From positions 1 through 9,368 of the IMG/VR virus record IMGVR_UViG_3300017469_000039: DNA of 9,368 bases; one strand, 5' to 3'. Below the pieces are notes generated by a model. The model had not been told where the DNA came from and did no database searches. It saw only the letters and a list, made by a program, of their open reading frames with translations. Below are positions 1 through 9,368 of the stretch, piece after piece. The number at the start of each line of letters is the position of its first letter. Position 1 is the first letter of the stretch. Made by a program: the position numbers and the translations under genes.

Positions 1-63
1 TTCGGAAGGAGAGAAAAAAAGATAAAATTGTCAAAAGAGAAAAAGAATTCAGAGGAGAGAAAT

Positions 64-646: not shown

Positions 647-1078
647 CTAATGGCGTATGTATGCAATATAGAAATCTTGTAGTGAGTTAAAATGATTCGA
701 TATTTCGCTAATATAAATATTAAAATCTATGCACGGACTACATAAAATTTTCATTGCATCTTTAATTTTTAAATTATAAATGTACATTATGCTTGCTAAT
801 GTAAAAGTTACACTCCTATGAACTCTAGCGTTACAATGTATTAATGTTCTCTGTTGTTTTTCAAAATTATTTCTTGTCAATTCCGCAACTAATAATAAAT
901 CATCAATATCAATTGGCGTGAAATCTGAATATTTCAGCCAAAGTTTTGCGTTTAGATTATGAAGTTCTTTTGCAACATTTATTGTATAAAACTCATGTCC
1001 GTGTTCTAAAGCGTATTTTCCGTCGCTTTGCCAAATCATTTTCTTTGGGTCAGAGCGTAAAAATCCCATTTTTATCAT
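647..1078 (-). CDS. PTP/dual-specificity phosphatase superfamily protein (CX5R)
   Basis: P-loop TLIHCNARVHRS (HCx5RS, nt 812-838), an upstream candidate general-acid loop (YSDFTPI) and a following hydrophobic helix. Start is uncertain (ATG at 1078, 1069 or 1039). Confidence 0.8.
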   Translation of the reverse strand: MIKMGFLRSDPKKMIWQSDGKYALEHGHEFYTINVAKELHNLNAKLWLKYSDFTPIDIDDLLLVAELTRNNFEKQQRTLIHCNARVHRSVTFTLASIMYIYNLKIKDAMKILCSPCIDFNIYISEISNHFNSLQDFYIAYIRH

Positions 1079-1156
1079 GTAATTTATAAGCTTTTTTCTG
1101 TTTTATTAGCTTATTATTTATGACATTTTAGAAAGATAGAGAGATAGAAGTTTAGA

Positions 1157-1170
1157 GAAAATTTTAAATA
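1157..1170 (+). promoter_or_regulatory. Strong archaeal BRE-TATA promoter GAAAATTTTAAATA
   Basis: Purine-rich BRE plus TTTAAATA upstream of the 1206 ORF. Near-identical copies at 2152-2165 (-) and 8571-8584 (+). Confidence 0.75.
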
Positions 1171-1205
1171 CTAGTTTTGACATAGATTATAACGGTGATA
1201 TGAGA

Positions 1206-1604
1206 ATGAGTAAAGAAGAGAGTAATTCAAGTCAAGATATAAGTCAGTTAGATTTGACTCAACTAACATTAGAGGAAAAACGCGATTTGATTCTAAGAGC
1301 TATAAAAGAAGGCAAAGAGGAGTCAAAGTTCATTTTACTACTAAGTGAATGGAGCAGACCTGGGCCTTCGTTTGAAGATCGTGCAGAAGTAAAGATATTA
1401 TACGGTGAAGTAGAGAGAGTGCTAATGAACAGAGTTTACAATTATCCGACAACAAATGAATTCTTATATGCTTTTATCCCAAGGACAAGAACAGTCATTC
1501 TATTACGTAAGACTGCGGATGATTATGAAGGGGAATTGCAAGAACATGAGACATTATATGTATTTACGTATTCTCAAGGCTGGAAGTCAATAGATTTATA
1601 TTAA
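1206..1604 (+). CDS. Hypothetical acidic viral protein (~132 aa), probable early gene
   Basis: Clean ORF with its own promoter and a downstream T-rich tract. SD GGTGA (1194-1198) lies 7 nt before ATG 1206; an alternative ATG is at 1200. Confidence 0.8.
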   Translation: MSKEESNSSQDISQLDLTQLTLEEKRDLILRAIKEGKEESKFILLLSEWSRPGPSFEDRAEVKILYGEVERVLMNRVYNYPTTNEFLYAFIPRTRTVILLRKTADDYEGELQEHETLYVFTYSQGWKSIDLY

Positions 1605-1760
1605 GCTATTTTCTTTTTTATTTTGCTCTAATTTCTTAGCTTTCTAATTTTGTTATTTTTAATTCCCTAGTTTCATGTTTGTTTTTCTTTAAGAAAAAGA
1701 TGTAATTCTATTTGAGAGTTGAGAAAAATTAGACATAAAAAAATAAGTTTAACTTAAAGA

Positions 1761-2120
1761 TTAGAAGTATACAGCAAATAAAAATTGCTTGTTTTCTTTT
1801 ATGAATATCTCAAGTCTAGTTTCATTTTCTTCAATTGTAATTTCTTTTGCTTCAATAATTTTTCTATTTCCAAATCTTAGTACTATATTTAATATTTCTT
1901 TTTTCTCATTTTTTACAAAAATAATATCAAATGCAAATATCTTTTTTCTAATTAGAGCAAACCCTTTAATGCTTGTTATCGCTCTGCTGATTGCTAATAT
2001 TTCTGGTGTCTCATCAAGCTCAAAATATGTTGTTAAAAGTTCTGCAATTTGATTCTTTGTGACTTGTCTAACTATATATCTAACGTTTTCCTTCCACTTA
2101 TCGACTTCTTTTTGAGACAT
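1761..2120 (-). CDS. Hypothetical viral protein (~119 aa), probable early gene
   Basis: ORF with K/E/I-rich viral composition. ATG at 2120 (MSQKEV) follows a GTGAG SD-like motif. Own promoter at 2152-2165. Confidence 0.75.
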   Translation of the reverse strand: MSQKEVDKWKENVRYIVRQVTKNQIAELLTTYFELDETPEILAISRAITSIKGFALIRKKIFAFDIIFVKNEKKEILNIVLRFGNRKIIEAKEITIEENETRLEIFIKENKQFLFAVYF

Positions 2121-2151
2121 TTTTCTCACACTTATATTTTAGAGATTTAGA

Positions 2152-2165
2152 TATTTAAATCTTTC
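2152..2165 (-). promoter_or_regulatory. Strong BRE-TATA promoter GAAAGATTTAAATA
   Basis: Reverse complement of TATTTAAATCTTTC, directly after the cas4 stop and 31 nt before ATG 2120. Confidence 0.72.
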
Positions 2166-2166
2166 T

Positions 2167-2790
2167 CTAGAACAATTTGCCGTAACAATAGTTAATAAAT
2201 TCGCAATTTGTGCAGAATTTGTTATTCATTCCTGGGACTTTTTTATAATCAGTTTGACTTAAATATTCTTTCATTTTCTTTATCCATTCAATTGCTTTCT
2301 TGGCATAAACTTCTAAGAGAACATCATCAATTTTCAATTGTTTAACTTCTTTAGTTGTCCTATTTAGATAAATGATGTATACATTGTCAATTTTGTAATT
2401 TTGCTTCTTTAAGAGATAGTAGTAAATTGCAACTTGATACAAGTGATATTCTTTAACTTGAAAAATTTCGTGACTTATAGTTTTTAATTCAATCAAATCA
2501 TTCCCGCAAATTAAATCAATTCTTGCAGATATTTTCATTCCTTCAATTTCATCATTTATTACTACTTCATTCTTACAATTCAATTTTTCAACTAGATAGC
2601 TTTCAATATGATAATGATATTGTACTCCTAAGTCCATATAAAATTCATTAATTTTTTTCTGGAAAGTGACTTTTCTAGAAAGATAGCTTCTTCTGAAACA
2701 AATTCCGATTTCGGACGGGAATATTGTGTCTTCTGGATATTTTACATTAAAACTTTCCTTAATTATATCTTCATAATTCATATATATCAC
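2167..2790 (-). CDS. cas4: Cas4-like Fe-S RecB-family exonuclease (SIRV2 gp19-like), not CRISPR-associated here
   Basis: PSEIGIC (first Cys), RIDLI / IELKT nuclease motifs, YQVAIY and C-terminal [10 protein letters not shown] (three Cys). The GTG start overlaps the ATPase stop; an alternative ATG is at 2781. Confidence 0.93.
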
Positions 2791-4103
2791 TCTGATAAAT
2801 TGAAATATCTCATTAATAATGATATCTGTTTACAAATTTCCTCACTTGACCTTTGACCGATTCTGATATCTATCCCGAGAGCTTGCAGTAAAATCTGAAT
2901 ATCTATAGCTTGTTCTTGTCTCCTAGATTGCAGATTATCACAATTTATATAATTTGTAGTTTTGTTAATTTTGTCTTGAATTAGTTCAACTAAAGCTCTA
3001 AGAATTGAAGGATATAAGACTCTTGCGTTAATGATTTGGTCGTAAGTTTTTTTAAGTGCAATTTGAATAATATGAATTCTATCTAAAATTGCCGGAGTAA
3101 ATATTTCATAATTTTGTAGATAGTCTTCTACGTCCGGAGTTGCTAATCTGTTAATTGTGTAAGAGTAAGGGTTTCCGGCGTAAATTATTGGCAAACATTT
3201 TTGAATAATTGCAGATTTTGATTCTGTACCGCTTCCTCTTGTCCAAATACAATTTTCAATTCCAGTACTTAGAGTTGAATTTATAGCGTTCAAGTTATTT
3301 TTTGATAAATTATCTTTCCAAGTTTGAATTTCATCAAATATTAAGCCGTTTGATAGAAATACTGCACCATACATATTATTACGGGCATCATAAACTAAAT
3401 TCGCATAAGTTGGGGCTTCTGTATAGTATCTGAAATTGAAGACTTCTTGGAGAATCATAAATGTTGTAGTTTTTCCAGTACCTCTGTTAGAAATTTCAAT
3501 ATAGTTAATTTGACGTTTTGTAATCGGGGATTTAAAAAGCGGGAATAATCTCGGCAAGAAGAGGAAAATGTCATTTACGTCCATTTTAGTCGGGTCATAT
3601 CCGAAAGCTTGCAGTAGTAGAGCGTATAATTGATGTTCATTTTCTGCAAGTTCAAAGAGTTCTTTTGCAATTTCATAATTATTTGGCGGTTCAATGGAAT
3701 AAATATCATTTATATACCAGCTATCTGTTCCTTTTCTAATTTTGACTAACATATAAGAAGAAATTAAATTATAGAAATCTTCTGGATTATTTGCAATTAA
3801 ATGCGGATCAAATTCTGCAGAAAATCCGTTTTGAAATCTTGCAAGTACTTGATTATCTTTTACTTTAAAGTTAGTAATCTTTGAGATAAATTTTACTTCA
3901 TCATTAAATAGCAAGTATGATTGGAAATATTGATTATCAATTCCGCGTTTGTAAGCCTTCAGAATTTCAATTCTTTTTCTTTCTTCAATTTGTTTTTCTC
4001 CTAGTATGATGTTCAGTATACGCTCCGTATCTCGTGGGTTGTAATAAAAAGAGTGGGCTATCTCTTTCTGGAGAAAAGAAGGCTTACTTTCGTTTTGAGA
4101 CAT
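2787..4103 (-). CDS. AAA+ ATPase, Lon/BrxL/MCM-related (SIRV2 gp18-like)
   Basis: Walker A variant SNRGTGKTT, Walker B LIFDE, sensor-like YAGN and Arg finger-like ILDRI. Lies between SSB and Cas4 as in rudiviruses. Confidence 0.88.
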
Positions 4104-4104
4104 G

Positions 4105-4112
4105 AAAAAAAA
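4105..4112 (-). terminator. Putative oligo(T)8 internal terminator/attenuator between SSB and ATPase genes
   Basis: T8 on the minus strand, ending 1 nt before the ATPase ATG. Archaeal intrinsic terminators are oligo(T) tracts. Confidence 0.4.
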
Positions 4113-4129
4113 GTTACGGTTTGACTTTT

Positions 4130-4516
4130 TTAAAATTCATCTTCTACGTTCTTTTTCTGTTGTTTCTTGGACTGTTGATGTTGTTCTTCTTCTAAGTCTA
4201 GTTCTTCTTCTTGTACTGAATTGCTATTCCTTCCAGTAAATTTTACATACTCATTTAGCAAATCAGCATATTTTGATAAGAATTCGCTGATTATTTTTAA
4301 ATCTTCTGCATCATTAGCAGTTATTCCGATTTGCTTTCTAAAGTTGTTCTGGCTATGGATAGTCATTGAATATCTTACAGAATTTCCATTTGGAATAGCG
4401 TTTAATTGAACTACTAGTCTCTTTATTCCTTTAATTTTCAATACTCTGGAAGCTATTTTATTATTTTGTTTCGCTTGACTTCCTAACTCTTCTATTATTT
4501 CTTTAAGGCTTGCCAT
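4130..4516 (-). CDS. Rudiviral single-stranded DNA-binding protein (SIRV ORF131/gp17-like, ~128 aa)
   Basis: MASLKEIIEELG...KIKGIKRLVVQLNA...RYSMTIHSQNNFRKQIGIT matches my recollection of SIRV ORF131. Acidic disordered tail ends EDEF. The ATG at 4516 fits a leaderless promoter, whereas the ORF-track TTG at 4540 lies within the promoter. Confidence 0.88.
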   Translation of the reverse strand: MASLKEIIEELGSQAKQNNKIASRVLKIKGIKRLVVQLNAIPNGNSVRYSMTIHSQNNFRKQIGITANDAEDLKIISEFLSKYADLLNEYVKFTGRNSNSVQEEELDLEEEQHQQSKKQQKKNVEDEF

Positions 4517-4532
4517 TAAGATAGTTAAAGAG

Positions 4533-4548
4533 TTTGACAAATATAAAA
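4533..4548 (-). promoter_or_regulatory. TATA+GTC promoter of the SSB-ATPase-Cas4 operon
   Basis: Minus strand TTTTATATTTGTCAAA, with GTC 19 nt before the ATG. Confidence 0.65.
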
Positions 4549-4610
4549 TTATAGAGTTGTAGAGTTAGGAATCTAAAAAATACAAAGATAAAAGTTAGAG
4601 AAAAAAAGAT

Positions 4611-4880
4611 TTAACTTAGTTGAAATATTATATTTCTAATTAGAGTTGATATCGGCATTTTATACTTTTTTGCAAGCTCTTCTAGTTTTTCATAGTAAAG
4701 TTCATCAACAGTTAGCGATACTCTTTCGCTATATATTTCTAAGTCTTCAATTCTTCTAATTTCTATATTTTTTTGAATTATTTCATCAATAATTTGTAGA
4801 ATTTTGTCCTTATTTTCATTAAAAAATTCTAGTTTACTTTTCGGAAGTCTTATGATTATATGTTTTTTGATGCTTTTCAT
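4611..4880 (-). CDS. Ribbon-helix-helix DNA-binding protein, probably tandem RHH
   Basis: C-terminal RVSLTVDELYYEKLEELAKKYKMPISTLIRNII is a typical CopG-like RHH. N-terminal HIIIRLPKSKLEFF...ILQIIDEII looks like a second, degenerate RHH. Confidence 0.75.
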   Translation of the reverse strand: MKSIKKHIIIRLPKSKLEFFNENKDKILQIIDEIIQKNIEIRRIEDLEIYSERVSLTVDELYYEKLEELAKKYKMPISTLIRNIIFQLS

Positions 4881-4919
4881 TATGTAGAGTCTTTGCGTTA
4901 AAATTTTTAAAGATTTCGA

Positions 4920-4936
4920 GAAATTTTTTAAATGTC
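4920..4936 (+). promoter_or_regulatory. BRE-TATA+GTC promoter of rep, back-to-back with the RHH gene promoter
   Basis: GAAATTTTTTAAATGTC, with GTC 18 nt before ATG 4955. Confidence 0.65.
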
Positions 4937-4954
4937 ACTTTTGCGATTTCAATT

Positions 4955-5311
4955 ATGAATTATGAAAAACTTTTAAGTTTCCACTTATCCTCTGCTTTTA
5001 CATATTTTGTTACAATTGCAACAAATTATAGATTTTATTCAACTACTCCGATTTATAAAAAATTTCGACAATATATTTATAATTTTGATAGGACTGCTCA
5101 TGTTTTCTCTGTTAAAGAAGTTACGCGAAATTCTAAAGGGTTGCATTATCATGTTCTAGTATTTCTTAACAGAAGATTAGACTATTCCGAAGTTCATGGG
5201 CATGTAGGTCTGCATGCAGACATTCGGATAGAAATTGTCCCGAAGACAAAGAGTGATTTTGAAAGAGTTTTTGCTTATATGTTAAAGCAGAATTCAAGAC
5301 TTTTTCCCTAA
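4955..5311 (+). CDS. rep: HUH-superfamily Rep / nicking-joining endonuclease (SIRV ORF119/gp16-like)
   Basis: Motif 1 YFVTIAT, HUH motif GLHYHVLVF, motif 3 YMLK (YxxK). 118 aa, near the SSB operon. Confidence 0.9.
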   Translation: MNYEKLLSFHLSSAFTYFVTIATNYRFYSTTPIYKKFRQYIYNFDRTAHVFSVKEVTRNSKGLHYHVLVFLNRRLDYSEVHGHVGLHADIRIEIVPKTKSDFERVFAYMLKQNSRLFP

Positions 5312-5476
5312 GTGATATCCGCCATGAATTAATAATGTTGAGAGTAAAATATATAGAATATTCATATAATTTTGACATTTGAATAATTCTGGATTTACAA
5401 CTGCTAAGAATAGAAAAACTGCAAATAGTACACTATGAACTAGAAAAGCTATAATATTGAGAGTTTCATTATTCAT
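5294..5476 (-). CDS. Small two-TM membrane protein (60 aa)
   Basis: Two hydrophobic segments (IIAFLVHSVLFAVFLFLAVV; ILYILLSTLLI) and a basic C-terminus. Fills the gap between rep and the 230-aa gene, with an 18-nt convergent overlap with rep. Confidence 0.65.
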   Translation of the reverse strand: MNNETLNIIAFLVHSVLFAVFLFLAVVNPELFKCQNYMNILYILLSTLLIHGGYHLGKKS

Positions 5477-5513
5477 GCTAAGTTTATTAAAGTTAAAGTG
5501 ATAAAAAAATATT

Positions 5514-6206
5514 ATGCAGAATCAGACATTAGAAAAATTGAGAAAAAATTCTAAATTTCTAGTTGAAAATTTTGAAGAAACAGAGCTAACAAAATTGAGC
5601 AAGCTTGAACAAGATTTAGGATACGGCGTAATTTGGCAAAATTTTGATGAAAATACTGGTTGCTTAAATTGGGTAATTTATAATAATAGCGGAATTGATA
5701 GAGAATTTGTATTAGTTAGAGGGACTCCGGAAGTCCCGCCTTACGCGTTTTTGAATTTCTATACAGAAGTATACAAAGCATTCGGAATTATTAAATTCGT
5801 AACTAATGAAAATAAGTATTATAATTATCCTTATAGGGTTGCTTTAGTTCGAGATGCTGACAACAACTTAAATTATGCCGGCGTTTTTTATGTCCCGGCG
5901 TTTAAGAAGCTTGTCTTAGAAGAATGTGGGTTCTCAGCACCGAACAATTTGCCGAATTACTACAGAGTATTTTTAGCTTTTCCGAGACAAACGCATGAAT
6001 ATTTTGTTGAATATAACCCGCTTGAAGTTGCACTTTATACAATGGAGACTGGAATTCCAGTATTTAATGCCCCGTTTCTGATATACTTACAAGAAGTTGA
6101 GAAATATATAGTTGATAACAGTGTTCCGTTTGCAAATAGTAGAGAATTTACAGAAGCAACTTGGCTAAAAAAGTCAATTTATAAATATTTAGGGATTTTA
6201 AAATGA
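5514..6206 (+). CDS. Hypothetical aromatic/beta-rich protein (230 aa)
   Basis: Long ORF with TATA TTTATTAA (5483-5490) 23 nt upstream (leaderless spacing). C-terminal amphipathic WLKKSIYKYLGILK. No catalytic motif recognised. Confidence 0.82.
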   Translation: MQNQTLEKLRKNSKFLVENFEETELTKLSKLEQDLGYGVIWQNFDENTGCLNWVIYNNSGIDREFVLVRGTPEVPPYAFLNFYTEVYKAFGIIKFVTNENKYYNYPYRVALVRDADNNLNYAGVFYVPAFKKLVLEECGFSAPNNLPNYYRVFLAFPRQTHEYFVEYNPLEVALYTMETGIPVFNAPFLIYLQEVEKYIVDNSVPFANSREFTEATWLKKSIYKYLGILK

Positions 6207-6769
6207 TAAGTAGATATTTATTTTTTAAAACATTGCTAATTGTTATTTTTTCAATTACTTACGCGTTTGTAGAAGTGAGGACGCCGTTCTATCTCTACAT
6301 TAATCCCTACATTTATCGCGTAATTTATTTCATTTTCTTTTTTGTAATTTCATTAGTTCCGAGTGTAACTCTAACATTTTCACTTTTCCTCTATAGCATG
6401 ACATTAGAAGATGTATTTTATTGGATTCTTGATAACACTTTGCCTTTCAATTACGCGTGGTATTATCCCGTTTATTATCATATTCCGATTGATGATATTG
6501 CTGAAGCTGTAGTTGCAACTGTTTTACTAAAGTTTTCAAACTCTAATTTCAGAACTCTGAAGTTCTATAATTCAGAATCTTGCAATATGTGGTATTATTT
6601 TACTCACGGAAGAACTCACGATTTATACGGCTTGCTAATTCTGATATTGTTGAATATCATCTTGTACTTTGCAACTAATATTTCTCTAGTTAAGTTTATT
6701 GCAATTGCAGATATTGTGGTCTCTACGGGAATATTTGTAGATTTATGGAGTCACTGCTTTCATCATTAG
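6203..6769 (+). CDS. Multi-pass membrane protein (188 aa) with EDxxYW motif and His-rich C-terminal module
   Basis: About 5-6 hydrophobic segments. Motifs TLEDVFYW, THGRTHD and VDLWSHCFHH. A 4-nt ATGA overlap with the upstream stop suggests translational coupling. Confidence 0.8.
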   Translation: MISRYLFFKTLLIVIFSITYAFVEVRTPFYLYINPYIYRVIYFIFFFVISLVPSVTLTFSLFLYSMTLEDVFYWILDNTLPFNYAWYYPVYYHIPIDDIAEAVVATVLLKFSNSNFRTLKFYNSESCNMWYYFTHGRTHDLYGLLILILLNIILYFATNISLVKFIAIADIVVSTGIFVDLWSHCFHH

Positions 6770-6771
6770 AT

Positions 6772-6788
6772 ACTTATTTATTTGTCAA
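6772..6788 (+). promoter_or_regulatory. TATA+GTC promoter of the svtR-like gene
   Basis: ACTTATTTATTTGTCAA, plus an SD-like GAGAGG before ATG 6815. Confidence 0.55.
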
Positions 6789-6814
6789 TTTCATTTTTTA
6801 AAAATTGAGAGGAA

Positions 6815-6961
6815 ATGTCAGAAGAAAAGGTAAGTTTCGGGATAGTAATTTCAAGAGAGTTGAAAACTAGACTGAAAATGTATTGTGCTAAAAATGATAA
6901 GAAAATAAAAGATGCTATTTCTGAAGCTCTTGATGAGTACTTGAGAAAAAGGGGCTTCTAA
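6815..6961 (+). CDS. svtR: SvtR-like ribbon-helix-helix transcriptional repressor (48 aa; absent from ORF track)
   Basis: Manual translation gives MSEEKVSFGIVISRELKTRLKMYCAKNDKKIKDAISEALDEYLRKRGF. It has the RHH pattern, and FGI / LKTRLKxYCAKN match my recollection of SIRV1 SvtR (ORF56b). Confidence 0.88.
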   Translation: MSEEKVSFGIVISRELKTRLKMYCAKNDKKIKDAISEALDEYLRKRGF

Positions 6962-7152
6962 TCCCCGTAAGATACTTCTATTTTTTTAACTCCGATAAAT
7001 TTTTTATGACAATTTGGACATTCATAATTTATTGATTTTAGAAGTTCAGCATTTGAATACAACTTTATACTTAGTAAATCATAACTTCTTGCATCTAAAA
7101 GTGTATATCCGCAATATCCGCATTTATAAATTACATGAACTCCTTTTTTCAT
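6958..7152 (-). CDS. Zinc-ribbon protein (64 aa)
   Basis: Two CxxC knuckles (YKCGYCG, YECPNCH) and a leaderless TATA+GTC promoter. Confidence 0.8.
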   Translation of the reverse strand: MKKGVHVIYKCGYCGYTLLDARSYDLLSIKLYSNAELLKSINYECPNCHKKFIGVKKIEVSYGD

Positions 7153-7168
7153 AATTCAAAAGCTTTGC

Positions 7169-7183
7169 TTGACAAATTTAAGA
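7169..7183 (-). promoter_or_regulatory. TATA+GTC promoter of the zinc-ribbon gene
   Basis: Minus strand TCTTAAATTTGTCAA, with GTC 18 nt before the ATG. Confidence 0.6.
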
Positions 7184-7355
7184 CTATTCTACGCTCTGCA
7201 GATATTCAAAATATTCATTATAAGCAATTTGTTGATTTGAGACTTCTGCAAACTCTAAGCTATATTTATCATATTTCGAATATTGTTTGACTTGTTCTAC
7301 TATAGAGAGAAATAGATAAATTTTTAAATGATAAAAGCGAATTATATAGATAGTG

Positions 7356-7742
7356 ATGCAAATGAAAATAGTCTCTATAAATAAAGATGTAGTTGTAAAT
7401 CTAAATAAGCAATTTTTTGTTTTAGAAGTTTTAGAAGGCGATAAATACGTAATTAATGATTTTACTTGGAACTCGAAAGTCTTAGAAGGGTATGAAGATG
7501 TGCTAATATTTAAGGACACTGACATTTATTATGCTGAGTGGGTTGATGCAAATTTAGTTCTACATCAAGTGATAGACTATGATCATTTAGCAAGATATCT
7601 GCATAACTTATTGCCACAACAATTTGGGTATTTCTATCTTATAACTAATAAATTTGTGCTAACTTTGCCAACTCACTTACTTATGAAGTTACCGTTAGTT
7701 GATGACCCTCTATTAACAAAGTATCATATAATCATAAATTGA
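7356..7742 (+). CDS. Hypothetical protein, first gene of an operon with the glutamine amidotransferase
   Basis: ORF preceded by TTTTTAAA (7321-7328). Its stop overlaps the SD of the next gene. Start could be 7353, 7356 or 7362. Confidence 0.78.
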   Translation: MQMKIVSINKDVVVNLNKQFFVLEVLEGDKYVINDFTWNSKVLEGYEDVLIFKDTDIYYAEWVDANLVLHQVIDYDHLARYLHNLLPQQFGYFYLITNKFVLTLPTHLLMKLPLVDDPLLTKYHIIIN

Positions 7743-7752
7743 GGTGAGTCTC

Positions 7753-8505
7753 ATGTGCTATAACTTAATTGTTAAAATATTTGATGTGAACAAAAAGCAA
7801 AAGAAAGAAGTCAAAAATCTGCTAAAAGAAATTTTCAATGAATTTAAATACAATGATGATGGGGCGTTTCTGTATAATTCTCTAAGTTCACAAATCATCA
7901 GAACTTTGAATTACAATGAATTTGAGAAAAAACTAGAGAATCTGAAAATCAGTAATAATACGCTAATACACATGCATTTAAGAAAAGCAACTTCTGGAAG
8001 CGTTACAGAGCAGAATATTCACGGTTGGCAAATAGGCAATTATATATGCAGTCATAACGGTTACTACGGCTATTCATATTATTATTCAATGAGCAAAAGC
8101 AAGTTAGATGATAATAGTGATAGTTATGAGTTCTTCTCAAAAAATGCAGAAGCAATAAATAATGAAGATATTGATAAAATCGATACTGACGGCTTTTACG
8201 GAGTTGCTTATTGCAATTCATTAGATTCTAAAAAATTATTGATTATATCAAAACATAAGACTGCAAAACTGTATTACTTACGTAGTTTGATATTAATTTC
8301 AAATGAGAGCTTAGATAATATATTATCACAATATTATACCGTCGGTGACTTTAAATTTAGATTAACAATGCCGAAAGCGGAGATAGAGAATAAAATTATA
8401 TTATTAGATACTAACACTTTCAAAATAATTAAGCAAAGGGATATAAAAGATTACTACTATTATTACAGTTACAGAAACAAGAATTACGACATCTACGATT
8501 TGTAA
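7753..8505 (+). CDS. Class II (Ntn-hydrolase) glutamine amidotransferase (~250 aa)
   Basis: SD GAGGTGA (7741-7747) points to ATG 7753, giving a Met-Cys start (N-terminal nucleophile). Motifs DDG, HLRKATSG, NIH, SHNG and SDS. Confidence 0.9.
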   Translation: MCYNLIVKIFDVNKKQKKEVKNLLKEIFNEFKYNDDGAFLYNSLSSQIIRTLNYNEFEKKLENLKISNNTLIHMHLRKATSGSVTEQNIHGWQIGNYICSHNGYYGYSYYYSMSKSKLDDNSDSYEFFSKNAEAINNEDIDKIDTDGFYGVAYCNSLDSKKLLIISKHKTAKLYYLRSLILISNESLDNILSQYYTVGDFKFRLTMPKAEIENKIILLDTNTFKIIKQRDIKDYYYYYSYRNKNYDIYDL

Positions 8506-8519
8506 TTTTTTTATTTTTC
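8506..8519 (+). terminator. Oligo(T) terminator after the amidotransferase
   Basis: T-tracts immediately after the TAA. Similar tracts follow the stops at 534 and 1604. Confidence 0.5.
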
Positions 8520-8530
8520 ATGTTTAAAGT

Positions 8531-8550
8531 TAAACGTTTTTTTACGTTTA
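8531..8550. repeat. Perfect 7-bp inverted repeat TAAACGT-T6-ACGTTTA
   Basis: Read directly from the sequence, 20 nt upstream of the amidoligase BRE-TATA. Confidence 0.6.
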
Positions 8551-8570
8551 TTCTCATGTCTCTTTTTATC

Positions 8571-8587
8571 GAAAGTTTTAAATAGTC
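8571..8587 (+). promoter_or_regulatory. Strong BRE-TATA(+GTC) promoter of the amidoligase
   Basis: GAAAGTTTTAAATAGTC; the TATA ends 23 nt before ATG 8608 (leaderless spacing). Confidence 0.75.
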
Positions 8588-8607
8588 TTTTCTCTATATT
8601 TCTAATT

Positions 8608-9368
8608 ATGAGAAAAATAATTAGTTCAATAGGAGTTGAATTAGAGGGCGTAATGCCCGATTCTCAAGTAAATCAAGCAATCACTTTTTTAAGAGAAAAG
8701 TATGAAAAGAAGGGGCTAATTCATGATATTGAAGCCCATCATGACGGTAGTATAGAAGTTAGCAATTATGATGAGACTGATGTTGAAATAACATTTTGGA
8801 GTCCAGCGTCAAACTATGAAAAGATATCTCAATTATATGGCGAAATTTATGATGAGTTAGCGGAGAAGTTTAGCTTTTATCAAAATTCTTCATGCGGGAA
8901 TCATATGCATTTAAAGCTAAGTTCTACAGTCTATTATTTCATATTATCGCTTCCTTCTAGTATTAAAATGTTTAAAGAAAAGTATGTTGAAAGATACAAG
9001 AACAACAGAAAGTATTTAAACAGATTGTTAAATAGATACAGTAAAGACTTTGAAGACCTTCAAGATATTGAAGACAATCAAAGAAACGGAGATAGATATC
9101 ATTTTATCAATTTCTCTTCAATGTATAAGCATAGTGATACGCAAACAGTAGAAATTCGTATAATGCCGTGGGCTGAAAGCGGTAGAGAGTACAGCGAAAT
9201 GGTTCAATTTAATTTAAACACTGTAGATGATATTGTATGGAGACAATATTTAAATGCTAAGAAATCATACTTGAGAGATCACGGAAGAGAATTGTATATT
9301 AATCATGTGAAGTATTATAGCCCTTATTTAGTTAATTATCTTTGGGGAAACGTTAAAGAACGCTTACT
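8608..9368 (+). CDS. Putative amidoligase (COOH-NH2 ligase, glutamine synthetase/gamma-glutamylcysteine ligase fold); 3' end beyond the window
   Basis: Manual translation is open to the window end: IGVELEG, HHDGS, VEI, SCGNHMH, DRYHFINF and TVEIR. These are the GxExE / DxS / E / GxHxH / RY..N / ExR motifs of phage amidoligases. Adjacent to a class II GATase. Confidence 0.88.
   Translation, partial: MRKIISSIGVELEGVMPDSQVNQAITFLREKYEKKGLIHDIEAHHDGSIEVSNYDETDVEITFWSPASNYEKISQLYGEIYDELAEKFSFYQNSSCGNHMHLKLSSTVYYFILSLPSSIKMFKEKYVERYKNNRKYLNRLLNRYSKDFEDLQDIEDNQRNGDRYHFINFSSMYKHSDTQTVEIRIMPWAESGREYSEMVQFNLNTVDDIVWRQYLNAKKSYLRDHGRELYINHVKYYSPYLVNYLWGNVKERL

What the first reader, a model, noticed from the sequence alone, without database searches (positions are those of the whole stretch)
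1157..8584. Shared 14-nt strong promoter GAAARWTTTAAATA marks three genes, including the amidoligase
Seen: GAAAATTTTAAATA (1157-1170 +), GAAAGATTTAAATA (2152-2165 -) and GAAAGTTTTAAATA (8571-8584 +). Established: anti-defence genes of Sulfolobales viruses, such as acrs, tend to be monocistronic early genes behind near-consensus BRE-TATA promoters. Inference: these three genes are immediate-early. The amidoligase is transcribed independently of its GATase and may act in host takeover or anti-defence.
Basis: partly seen in the sequence, partly recalled or inferred. Interest (0 to 1): 0.6.

Follow-up and report, generated by a model that had tools for sequence, protein, structure and literature searches.

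The report
Rudivirus early-type BRE-TATA promoter core
The shared 14-base motif is real and is the core of the strong promoter class already described for early anti-defence genes of Sulfolobus rod-shaped viruses. Two of the three marked genes belong to published candidate anti-defence families. The third, an amidoligase, has its own conserved copy of the core promoter, but its timing and role remain untested.

Summary
GAAARWTTTAAATA occurs exactly three times, where 0.03 is expected. Each copy lies 22-31 nt upstream of a start codon and points toward it.

The window is a fragment (about 30% complete) of an uncultured rudivirus related to the SIRVs. The motif is a purine-rich BRE plus a TTTAWATA TATA box. 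This is the core of the early anti-defence-gene (ADG) promoter described by Bhoobalan-Chitty et al. 2024. In SIRV2 a relaxed form of the motif recovers the published ADG set and no core or structural gene.

- **g134 (family ADG.05):** it carries the whole ~70-nt SIRV-type regulatory sequence.
- **g119 (family ADG.21):** it shares only the core, plus a short box just downstream of the TATA.
- **Amidoligase:** it also shares only the core and that box. Its promoter is conserved in six relatives although synonymous sites are saturated. T-runs follow the GATase stop, so a separate, leaderless transcript is well supported by sequence. However, the gene lies among core genes next to dCTP deaminase and the capsid gene, lacks the ADG flanks, and has the spacing of core-gene promoters. 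The source paper grades such cases as low probability.

No RNA run was listed, so timing is untested. The anti-defence role proposed for the amidoligase is speculation.

The parts
1157..1170 (+). BRE (GAAAA) plus TATA box (TTTAAATA, 1163-1170) of the g134 promoter
   Evidence: Exact motif hit. Core PWM score 15.4 bits.
1137..1199 (+). Extended SIRV-type early/ADG regulatory sequence around the g134 promoter. It includes the upstream TAGAGAGATA..AAGTTTAGA block, the downstream CTAGTTTTGACATA block, and the Shine-Dalgarno sequence GGTGA at 1194-1198.
   Evidence: The flank PWM from 28 SIRV2/SIRV9/V3 sites scores 19.3 bits upstream and 24.9 bits downstream. The training medians are 18.7 and 22.5. 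This is the top 0.01% of all window positions.
1200..1604 (+). g134, a small monocistronic gene of family ADG.05. The likely true start is the ATG at 1206.
   Evidence: tblastn gives 46-50% identity to SIRV1-XX ORF134b (CAG38864) and to the SIRV V3/V60 genes listed as ADG.05. It matches phrog_10536. A T6 run follows the stop.
2152..2165 (-). BRE-TATA core of the g119 promoter. It directly abuts the Cas4 stop codon (2167-2169).
   Evidence: Exact motif hit. Core PWM score 18.8 bits, the best in the window. It is identical to the SIRV2 gp02/gp05/gp52 core and is conserved in L010, L012 and L008.
1761..2120 (-). g119, homologue of SIRV8 gp59 and SIRV9 gp55 (family ADG.21)
   Evidence: tblastn gives 42% identity over 100% of the length. 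ADG.21 is listed in Supplementary Data 1. The promoter and 5' leader resemble those of SIRV9 ORF55.
8506..8567 (+). T-runs after the GATase stop codon: T7 at 8506-8512, T5 at 8514-8518, T7 at 8537-8543 and T5 at 8563-8567. They look like archaeal oligo-T terminator signals.
   Evidence: A T-run just before the BRE is kept in every relative, even in L007, where 60 nt of spacer are deleted. Their role in termination is inferred.
8571..8584 (+). BRE-TATA core of the amidoligase promoter
   Evidence: Exact motif hit. In six related contigs, 12-14 of the 14 bases are conserved, while synonymous sites are saturated.
8585..8607 (+). Conserved block between the TATA box and the ATG, with an invariant TTCTCTATA at 8590-8598. 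The ATG lies 23 nt after the TATA box, which predicts a leaderless mRNA.
   Evidence: Alignment A3. In relatives, the 16 nt after the TATA box are 11-13/16 identical to the g119 promoter of the same genome (p 1e-3 to 3e-5). In the window the figure is only 8/16.
8608..9366 (+). Amidoligase_2 enzyme, N-terminal 253 of 375 residues. The gene runs off the end of the contig.
   Evidence: Pfam PF12224: 33.8 bits against a cutoff of 22, E 4e-8. Full-length relatives are 375 aa. The motifs GVELEG, HHDGS, CGNHMH and E-I-R are invariant.
7753..8505 (+). Class-II (Ntn) glutamine amidotransferase-like protein, the second gene of the g126-GATase operon
   Evidence: Cys2, R-K-A-T-S-G, H-N-G and S-D-S-Y-E are invariant. 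ESM Atlas neighbours belong to GATase_6/4/7, score 0.94. Foldseek top hits are the GlmS glutaminase domain, EgtC and PurF, E 7e-5, on a model with pLDDT 59.6. The Pfam GATase_4 hit is only E 0.045.
7362..7742 (+). g126, an orphan gene translationally coupled to the GATase gene (GAGGTGA before the ATG at 7753). Its own promoter lies at about 7313-7330.
   Evidence: No T-run follows its stop. There is no Pfam, PHROG or Atlas hit. The gene order is conserved in all relatives.

Best explanation
The 14-mer is the core of a strong archaeal promoter. The TATA box TTTAAATA is bound by host TBP. A purine-rich BRE (GAAAR) one base upstream is bound by host TFB. This is the same core that defines the early anti-defence-gene (ADG) promoters of Sulfolobus rudiviruses. 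In this rudivirus fragment it drives three separate transcription units of at least two kinds.

(a) g134 (family ADG.05) carries the complete ~70-nt SIRV-type regulatory sequence, a ~12-nt leader and a GGTGA ribosome-binding site. It is most likely a true member of the early, repressor-controlled ADG regulon.

(b) g119 (family ADG.21) and the amidoligase share only the core. In relatives they also share a TCTAWWTCTCTAWA box just downstream of the TATA box.

The amidoligase is transcribed from its own promoter as a leaderless, monocistronic mRNA. The upstream g126-GATase operon ends at oligo-T runs. Because the promoter is near-consensus and needs no viral activator, transcription probably starts as soon as the genome enters the cell. 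Nothing indicates the early shut-off typical of ADGs.

Shown: the motif, its position, its conservation, and the gene-family memberships. Inferred: the start sites, promoter strength, termination and timing.
For: - **Statistics and placement:**
- **Identity with the published ADG core:** the paper describes a purine-rich BRE plus TTTAWATA.
- **Specificity in complete genomes:** in SIRV2 the relaxed pattern RAAARNTTTAWATA gives 14 hits. Eleven precede gp01/54, gp02/53, gp03, gp05, gp07, gp08, gp47, gp48 and gp52. For ten of these eleven genes I found the entry in the paper's ADG list; gp48 (acrIIIB1) I took from the paper's text. No hit precedes a core or structural gene. In SIRV9 and SIRV V3, hits lie within about 5 kb of the termini, apart from one central site in V3.
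- **Specificity in this lineage:** in 9-17 kb contigs that include the capsid and glycosyltransferase genes, only g119 and the amidoligase carry the motif.
- **g134 flanks:** they score at the training median.
- **Gene families:**
- **Amidoligase promoter footprint:** the 37-nt block is 81-95% identical between relatives while pS is 0.64-0.90. It is retained in L007 despite a 60-nt spacer deletion.
- **Operon boundaries:** T-runs follow the GATase stop but not the g126 stop.
Against: - There are no transcript data at all. No RNA run was listed.
- The same core drives constitutively expressed host genes, so strength is not timing.
- The upstream flank of the amidoligase promoter scores at null level (z 0.3).
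- Its TATA-to-ATG spacing of 23 nt matches the leaderless TATA+GTC core-gene promoters (21-22 nt), not the 32-35 nt of SIRV ADGs.
- The box shared with g119 is degenerate in the window itself (8/16, p 0.07).
- No Aca8 homologue was found, but only about 30% of the genome is available.
- g119 may also be read through from the ATPase-Cas4 operon.
Confidence: 0.72

Rival explanations
1. One reading: all three genes form one immediate-early regulon, and the amidoligase is an anti-defence or host-takeover enzyme expressed ahead of its GATase.
For: In SIRV2 every gene-proximal copy of the relaxed motif precedes a gene the paper treats as an early ADG. The amidoligase is an accessory gene, absent from all deposited rudivirus genomes. 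It is the only gene in the central region with this core. In relatives it shares a downstream box with the ADG.21 promoter. A central gene carrying the motif has a precedent: the SIRV V3 site at 13513, upstream of a 121-aa ORF.
Against: The promoter lacks the ADG flanking sequence. The arrangement is leaderless and the gene sits among core genes, which the source paper calls low probability. The partner GATase has a different, weaker promoter. No functional or expression data exist. Amidoligase-GATase pairs in phages have no demonstrated function.
Confidence: 0.2
2. These are generic strong promoters with no temporal meaning. The 14-mer is simply the optimal TBP/TFB site, reached independently by any gene that needs high expression. 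The amidoligase is a highly and continuously expressed metabolic or modification enzyme that acts during replication or assembly.
For: The core is shared with constitutive host genes such as cren7. The amidoligase promoter has core-gene spacing, and in the window it even has a GTC after the TATA box. The gene lies beside the dCTP deaminase and capsid genes.
Against: In three complete rudiviruses the motif is nearly confined to terminal ADG genes and is absent from highly expressed structural genes such as the capsid gene. The g134 flanks show regulon membership, not convergence.
Confidence: 0.2
3. The matches are chance occurrences in AT-rich DNA.
For: The window is about 71% A+T.
Against: Only 0.03 matches are expected, and 0 of 200 shuffles gave 3. 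All three are correctly oriented and spaced before start codons. They are conserved in relatives although synonymous sites are saturated.
Confidence: 0.01

Closest known systems
Early/ADG regulatory sequence of rudiviruses (SIRV2 aca8, acrID1 gp03, acrIIIB1 gp48; Bhoobalan-Chitty et al. 2024, PMC11065993)
   Same: Both have a purine-rich BRE plus TTTAWATA. The window's 2152-2165 14-mer is identical to the core before SIRV2 gp02, gp05 and gp52. The g134 region matches the whole ~70-nt consensus, including the leader and GGTGA.
   Different: g119 and the amidoligase lack the upstream consensus. The amidoligase is leaderless, encodes a 375-aa enzyme and lies in the central genome. No Aca8 gene is visible in the fragment.
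TATA+GTC promoters of SIRV1/SIRV2 (Kessler et al. 2004, as summarised in PMC5569661)
   Same: Most core genes in the window (ATPase, SSB, Rep, 56B, Zn64) use a TATA box followed by GTC, with 18-19 nt to the ATG. The window's amidoligase promoter also reads TATA+GTC, with 20 nt to the ATG.
   Different: The GTC is missing from the amidoligase promoter in all six relatives. TATA+GTC promoters lack the GAAAR BRE.
Canonical strong Sulfolobus BRE-TATA promoters (SSV1 T6 is recalled from memory; host cren7 and the cas I-A promoters are named in PMC11065993)
   Same: The TBP and TFB recognition core is the same.
   Different: Those promoters are constitutive or repressor-controlled host or fusellovirus promoters. 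They say nothing about timing in a rudivirus.
Amidoligase_2 plus class-II GATase gene pairs of tailed phages (LUZ24-like early module, PMC3890496) and of a Poseidoniales virus (PMC11706807); Iyer et al. 2009, as cited in PMC11706807
   Same: The same two enzyme families sit next to each other in a virus, in the early region in LUZ24-like phages.
   Different: No sequence match to any deposited phage or archaeal virus. This is the first case seen in a rudivirus. The two genes are in separate transcription units, and a third, orphan gene (g126) is linked to them.

Membership tests
Rudiviral early/ADG regulatory sequence (Bhoobalan-Chitty 2024) | Strong core promoter: a purine-rich BRE directly upstream of a TTTAWATA TATA box | tested here: met
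   All three sites match. They are the top three core PWM scores in the window.
Rudiviral early/ADG regulatory sequence (Bhoobalan-Chitty 2024) | A shared regulatory sequence flanking the core, conserved among ADGs of one genome | tested here: inconclusive
   g134 meets this against the SIRV consensus (19.3 and 24.9 bits). g119 and the amidoligase have null-level upstream flanks (z 0.3-0.7). They share only a downstream box, which is clear in relatives (11-13/16) and weak in the window (8/16). A within-genome test is limited because only about 30% of the genome is held.
Rudiviral early/ADG regulatory sequence (Bhoobalan-Chitty 2024) | A single gene, not part of an operon | tested here: met
   g134 and the amidoligase are flanked by T-runs or convergent genes. 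g119 is doubtful, because no T-run follows the co-directional Cas4 gene.
Rudiviral early/ADG regulatory sequence (Bhoobalan-Chitty 2024) | Not among conserved core genes, and the start site not next to the start codon (the paper's grounds for a 'low-probability' grade) | tested here: not met
   This fails for the amidoligase. The gap from TATA box to ATG is 23 nt, which predicts a leaderless mRNA, and the gene lies between the 56B/Zn64 genes and the dCTP deaminase and capsid genes. g134 meets it.
Rudiviral early/ADG regulatory sequence (Bhoobalan-Chitty 2024) | Transcription immediately after infection, followed by repression | not testable with these tools
   No RNA run was listed, and there is no isolate.
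ADG.05 protein family | Sequence homology to listed members (SIRV1-XX CAG38864, the SIRV V3/V60 genes) | tested here: met
   46-50% identity over 93-99% of g134, E 4e-35 to 3e-40.
ADG.21 protein family | Sequence homology to SIRV8 gp59 and SIRV9 gp55 | tested here: met
   42% identity over 100% of g119, E 3e-20 to 3e-28.
Amidoligase_2 (PF12224) | Pfam score above the gathering threshold | tested here: met
   33.8 bits against a cutoff of 22 for the window fragment, and 28.2 bits for the full-length P0001. P0004 falls just below, at 20.6 bits.
Class-II (Ntn) glutamine amidotransferase | N-terminal catalytic Cys and the Ntn four-layer fold | tested here: met
   Cys2 is invariant, as are R-K-A-T-S-G, H-N-G and S-D-S. 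Foldseek top hits are GlmS, EgtC and PurF, probability 1.00, TM about 0.5, on a model of modest confidence. Pfam is below threshold, and there is no PDB sequence hit.

The most novel reading that the evidence does not exclude
The g126-GATase-amidoligase module is an enzymatic anti-defence or host-takeover system of an uncultured rudivirus lineage. Its ligase is driven from an ADG-grade promoter, so it is made from the first minutes of infection. It might amidate or ligate a host protein or a small signalling molecule. It would be the first enzyme-type ADG found through the promoter signature in an archaeal virus.
Probability: 0.15. Interest if true: 0.65.

Novelty: new member of a known kind. 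Interest (0 to 1): 0.33.

Why it matters
The promoter signature is a published way to find anti-defence genes in archaeal viruses. This fragment adds new members of two candidate families, ADG.05 and ADG.21. It also shows that the 14-base core alone over-calls. Flank conservation and TATA-to-ATG spacing separate a full regulon member (g134) from genes that carry only the core. The amidoligase-GATase module is new for rudiviruses. It is conserved under purifying selection, and its promoter is conserved as well. That makes it a concrete candidate for biochemical study, though its role is open.

Tried and rejected
- **Relatives of the amidoligase in public virus collections:** the IMG/VR scan with the amidoligase found no relative. 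tblastn of the amidoligase against deposited phage and archaeal virus genomes found none, even at E <= 1. The GATase gave one marginal hit.
- **Whole-genome motif scan:** not possible, because the 'genome' is only this contig. I used related contigs and complete SIRV genomes instead.
- **RNA evidence:** none was listed.
- **Regulator and Acr homologues:** tblastn for Aca8, AcrID1 and AcrIIIB1 in the window and related loci found nothing.
- **Other blanks:** the PDB sequence search with the GATase profile found nothing. The ESM Atlas search for g126 found nothing.
- **Papers not held:** Kessler 2004, Quax 2013 and Iyer 2009. Their content is cited only through papers that summarise them.
- **Tools deliberately not used:** the sigma-70 promoter and hairpin-terminator scanner, because archaeal signals differ. 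The large representative-protein search, because the amidoligase already has a family assignment.
- **Ideas rejected:** the three sites are not copies of an inverted or direct repeat, since nothing beyond the core aligns among all three. The GTC after the amidoligase TATA box is probably not functional, since no relative has it.
Full report
**What the window is.** The 9368-bp window is a complete IMG/VR contig, and CheckV puts it at about 30% of a genome. Positions 2196-4709 are about 76% identical in DNA to the Cas4-nuclease / Lon-like ATPase / ssDNA-binding block of Sulfolobus islandicus rod-shaped viruses.

Pfam identifies these genes:
- Cas4/PD-(D/E)XK nuclease (2167-2781, minus strand)
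- BrxL-like ATPase (2787-4103, minus strand)
- PHA01746 SSB (4130-4516, minus strand)
- an RHH protein (4611-4880, minus strand)
- the rudiviral Rep (4955-5311, plus strand)
- a 56B-type RHH (6815-6961, plus strand)
- a dual-specificity phosphatase (647-1078, minus strand)
- Amidoligase_2 (8608-9366, plus strand, running off the contig end)

So this is the left part of an uncultured rudivirus with the gene order of a Usarudivirus.

**The observation.** GAAARWTTTAAATA occurs exactly three times, at the stated places. Shuffles predict 0.03 matches, and 0 of 200 shuffles gave 3. Each copy points toward an ORF:

| Gene | Gap, motif end to ATG | Ribosome-binding site |
|---|---|---|
| g134 (ATG 1200) | 29 nt | GGTGA at 1194-1198 |
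| g134 (ATG 1206, the better-spaced start) | 35 nt | same GGTGA |
| g119 (ATG 2120) | 31 nt | GTGA-type site |
| amidoligase (ATG 8608) | 23 nt | none |

With the usual Sulfolobus spacing of about 22-24 nt between the TATA box and the start site (my own knowledge), the amidoligase mRNA would be leaderless. The other two would have leaders of about 8-13 nt.

**What the motif is.** It is a purine-rich BRE plus a TTTAWATA TATA box. Bhoobalan-Chitty et al. 2024 describe exactly this core for the early genes of SIRV2, including aca8, acrID1 and acrIIIB1. They used it to predict anti-defence genes (ADGs) in archaeal viruses (PMC11065993).

I tested this on complete genomes with the relaxed pattern RAAARNTTTAWATA.
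- **SIRV2:** 14 hits. Eleven precede gp01/54, gp02/53, gp03, gp05, gp07, gp08, gp47, gp48 and gp52. For ten of these genes I found the entry in the paper's ADG list; gp48 (acrIIIB1) I took from the paper's text. Two hits lie inside the terminal repeats with no ORF behind them. One is intragenic. None precedes a core or structural gene.
- **SIRV9 and SIRV V3:** the hits lie within about 5 kb of the termini, apart from one central site in V3, upstream of a 121-aa ORF.
- **Core genes:** in SIRV2 and in the window they use a different promoter, a TATA box followed by GTC. This is the virus-specific element of Kessler et al. 2004, as summarised in PMC5569661.

**The genes behind the motif.**
- g134 is 46-50% identical to SIRV1-XX ORF134b and to the SIRV V3/V60 genes that the paper lists as family ADG.05.
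- g119 is 42% identical over its full length to SIRV8 gp59 and SIRV9 gp55, family ADG.21.
- The amidoligase has no homologue in any deposited phage or archaeal virus genome.
- The word-based protein search found only eight close relatives, all from metagenomes. Full length is 375 aa.

**Related contigs.** Six related contigs (L007-L012) show one lineage with a fixed gene order:
1. Cas4, ATPase, SSB and RHH on the minus strand
2. Rep, g230, a membrane protein and 56B
3. Zn64 on the minus strand
4. g126 and GATase
5. amidoligase
6. dCTP deaminase on the minus strand
7. further on, the major capsid protein and a glycosyltransferase

The amidoligase therefore lies in the central core region, not in the terminal ADG clusters.

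**Are the three promoters one class?** They are not. I built a PWM from 28 non-redundant SIRV2, SIRV9 and V3 sites and scored the flanks only, 20 nt upstream and 40 nt downstream.

| Promoter | Upstream flank | Downstream flank |
|---|---|---|
| g134 | 19.3 bits | 24.9 bits |
| training-set median | 18.7 bits | 22.5 bits |
| g119 and amidoligase | null level (z 0.3-0.7) | z 1.9-2.9 |

The g134 scores are in the top 0.01% of all window positions. Its region carries the entire ~70-nt regulatory sequence that the paper links to Aca8 repression.

In relatives, the 16 nt after the TATA box are 11-13/16 identical between the g119 and amidoligase promoters of the same genome (p 1e-3 to 3e-5). That suggests a second, lineage-specific element, TCTAWWTCTCTAWA. 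In the window itself the figure is only 8/16.

The amidoligase's spacing (23 nt, leaderless) matches the TATA+GTC core-gene promoters (21-22 nt), not the 32-35 nt of the SIRV ADGs. In the window a GTC even follows its TATA box, but no relative has it. The source paper grades core-promoter matches among conserved genes, or with a start site next to the start codon, as low-probability ADGs that are unlikely to be immediate-early. It also notes that the core promoter is shared with constitutive host genes such as cren7.

**Independent transcription of the amidoligase.** Sequence evidence supports this well.
- g126 and the GATase gene are coupled: 10 nt apart, with GAGGTGA and no T-run between them.
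- The GATase stop is followed at once by T7, T5, T7 and T5 runs.
- Then comes the promoter. All relatives keep a T-run plus (G/A)AAAG(C/T)TTTAAATA at a fixed 23 nt from the ATG. L007 keeps them even though 60 nt of spacer are deleted.
- Between lineage members, synonymous sites are saturated (pS 0.64-0.90) and pN is 0.13-0.23. Yet the 37-nt promoter block is 81-95% identical, and the 14-mer is 12-14/14 identical. This is a clear footprint of selection on non-coding sequence.
- The amidoligase is followed by a convergent gene, so it is monocistronic.
- g119, in contrast, sits 46 nt behind the co-directional Cas4 gene with no T-run. Read-through from that operon is possible.

**The enzymes.**
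- **Amidoligase:** the assignment passes Pfam's threshold, and the characteristic acidic, His and Arg motifs are invariant. Equating these motifs with catalytic residues rests on my own knowledge.
- **GATase:** Pfam alone is weak (E 0.045). However, Cys2 and the R-x-A-T-x-G, H-N-G and S-D-S motifs are invariant. ESM Atlas neighbours are GATase_6/4/7 families of viruses. A modest AlphaFold model (pLDDT 59.6, pTM 0.65) hits the GlmS glutaminase domain, EgtC and PurF.
- **The pair in other viruses:** such amidoligase-GATase pairs are known in the early region of LUZ24-like phages and in a Poseidoniales virus. No function has been demonstrated for them.

An anti-defence role here is therefore a hypothesis without direct support.

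**What could not be tested.** Timing and start sites could not be tested. No RNA run was listed, so no reads were laid. No Aca8, AcrID1 or AcrIIIB1 homologue is present in the window or the related loci, but these are fragments.

**Verdict.** The motif is already known as the rudiviral early/ADG promoter core.
- g134 is a convincing new member of that regulon.
- g119 is a probable member.
- The amidoligase carries only the core, in a core-gene-like, leaderless arrangement.

The amidoligase's separate transcription is well supported. Immediate-early timing is plausible but unproven; I put early onset at roughly even odds. The anti-defence function is speculative, at about 0.15.

Noticed in passing
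window 647-1078 (-): A dual-specificity protein phosphatase-like gene (PF00782, E 6e-9; phrog_16270) lies in the variable left region. It diverges from g134, and its own TATA+GTC-type promoter sits back-to-back with the g134 promoter.
   Followed up: partly
window 22-32 (+), 4123-4137 (-), 4536-4550 (-), 4922-4936 (+), 6774-6786 (+), 7171-7181 (-): Most core genes use an A/T-rich TATA box followed directly by GTC. For ATPase, SSB, Rep and Zn64 the gap from GTC to ATG is 18-19 nt, which predicts leaderless mRNAs. This is a second, distinct promoter class matching the SIRV1/2 GTC element.
   Followed up: partly
window 2121-2169 (-): The g119 promoter abuts the Cas4 stop codon, and no T-run separates the two co-directional genes. 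g119 may therefore also be transcribed by read-through from the ATPase-Cas4 operon.
   Followed up: no
window 1194-1208 (+): g134 has two in-frame ATGs, at 1200 and 1206. The GGTGA at 1194-1198 is spaced correctly only for 1206, so the protein is probably 132 aa.
   Followed up: no
window 8449-8505 (+): The GATase-like protein ends in a conserved tyrosine-rich tail (D-Y-Y-Y-Y-Y-S-Y ... Y-D-L). The model has low confidence there. Its significance is unknown.
   Followed up: no
L010:8260-9387 (+) and the equivalent genes in other relatives: The full-length amidoligase is 375 aa. The C-terminal ~170 residues match no Pfam family.
   Followed up: no
window 7362-7742 (+): g126 is an orphan protein with no Pfam, PHROG or ESM Atlas match. 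It is always found directly upstream of the GATase gene and is translationally coupled to it. Its promoter has ADG-like spacing (about 32 nt plus a GTGA site) but a weaker core.
   Followed up: partly
window 4881-4954: The divergent RHH89 and Rep genes have back-to-back promoters. Their BREs form a short inverted repeat (ATTTC-GA-GAAAT). This may be a site of autoregulation by the RHH protein.
   Followed up: no
L013:762-775, L014:140-153, L015:703-716: The terminal repeats of SIRV2, SIRV9 and SIRV V3 each hold a conserved copy of the same BRE-TATA core (GAAAAGTTTAWATA) with no ORF behind it. It may be a promoter for a non-coding transcript.
   Followed up: no
L013:1138-1389 and L014:2899-3102: RefSeq labels the Aca8 genes of SIRV2 and SIRV9 'terminase small subunit', with a start codon upstream of the promoter. 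The 2024 paper corrects the SIRV2 start, and my motif scan agrees: the ATG lies 35 nt after the motif and gives a 55-aa product.
   Followed up: partly
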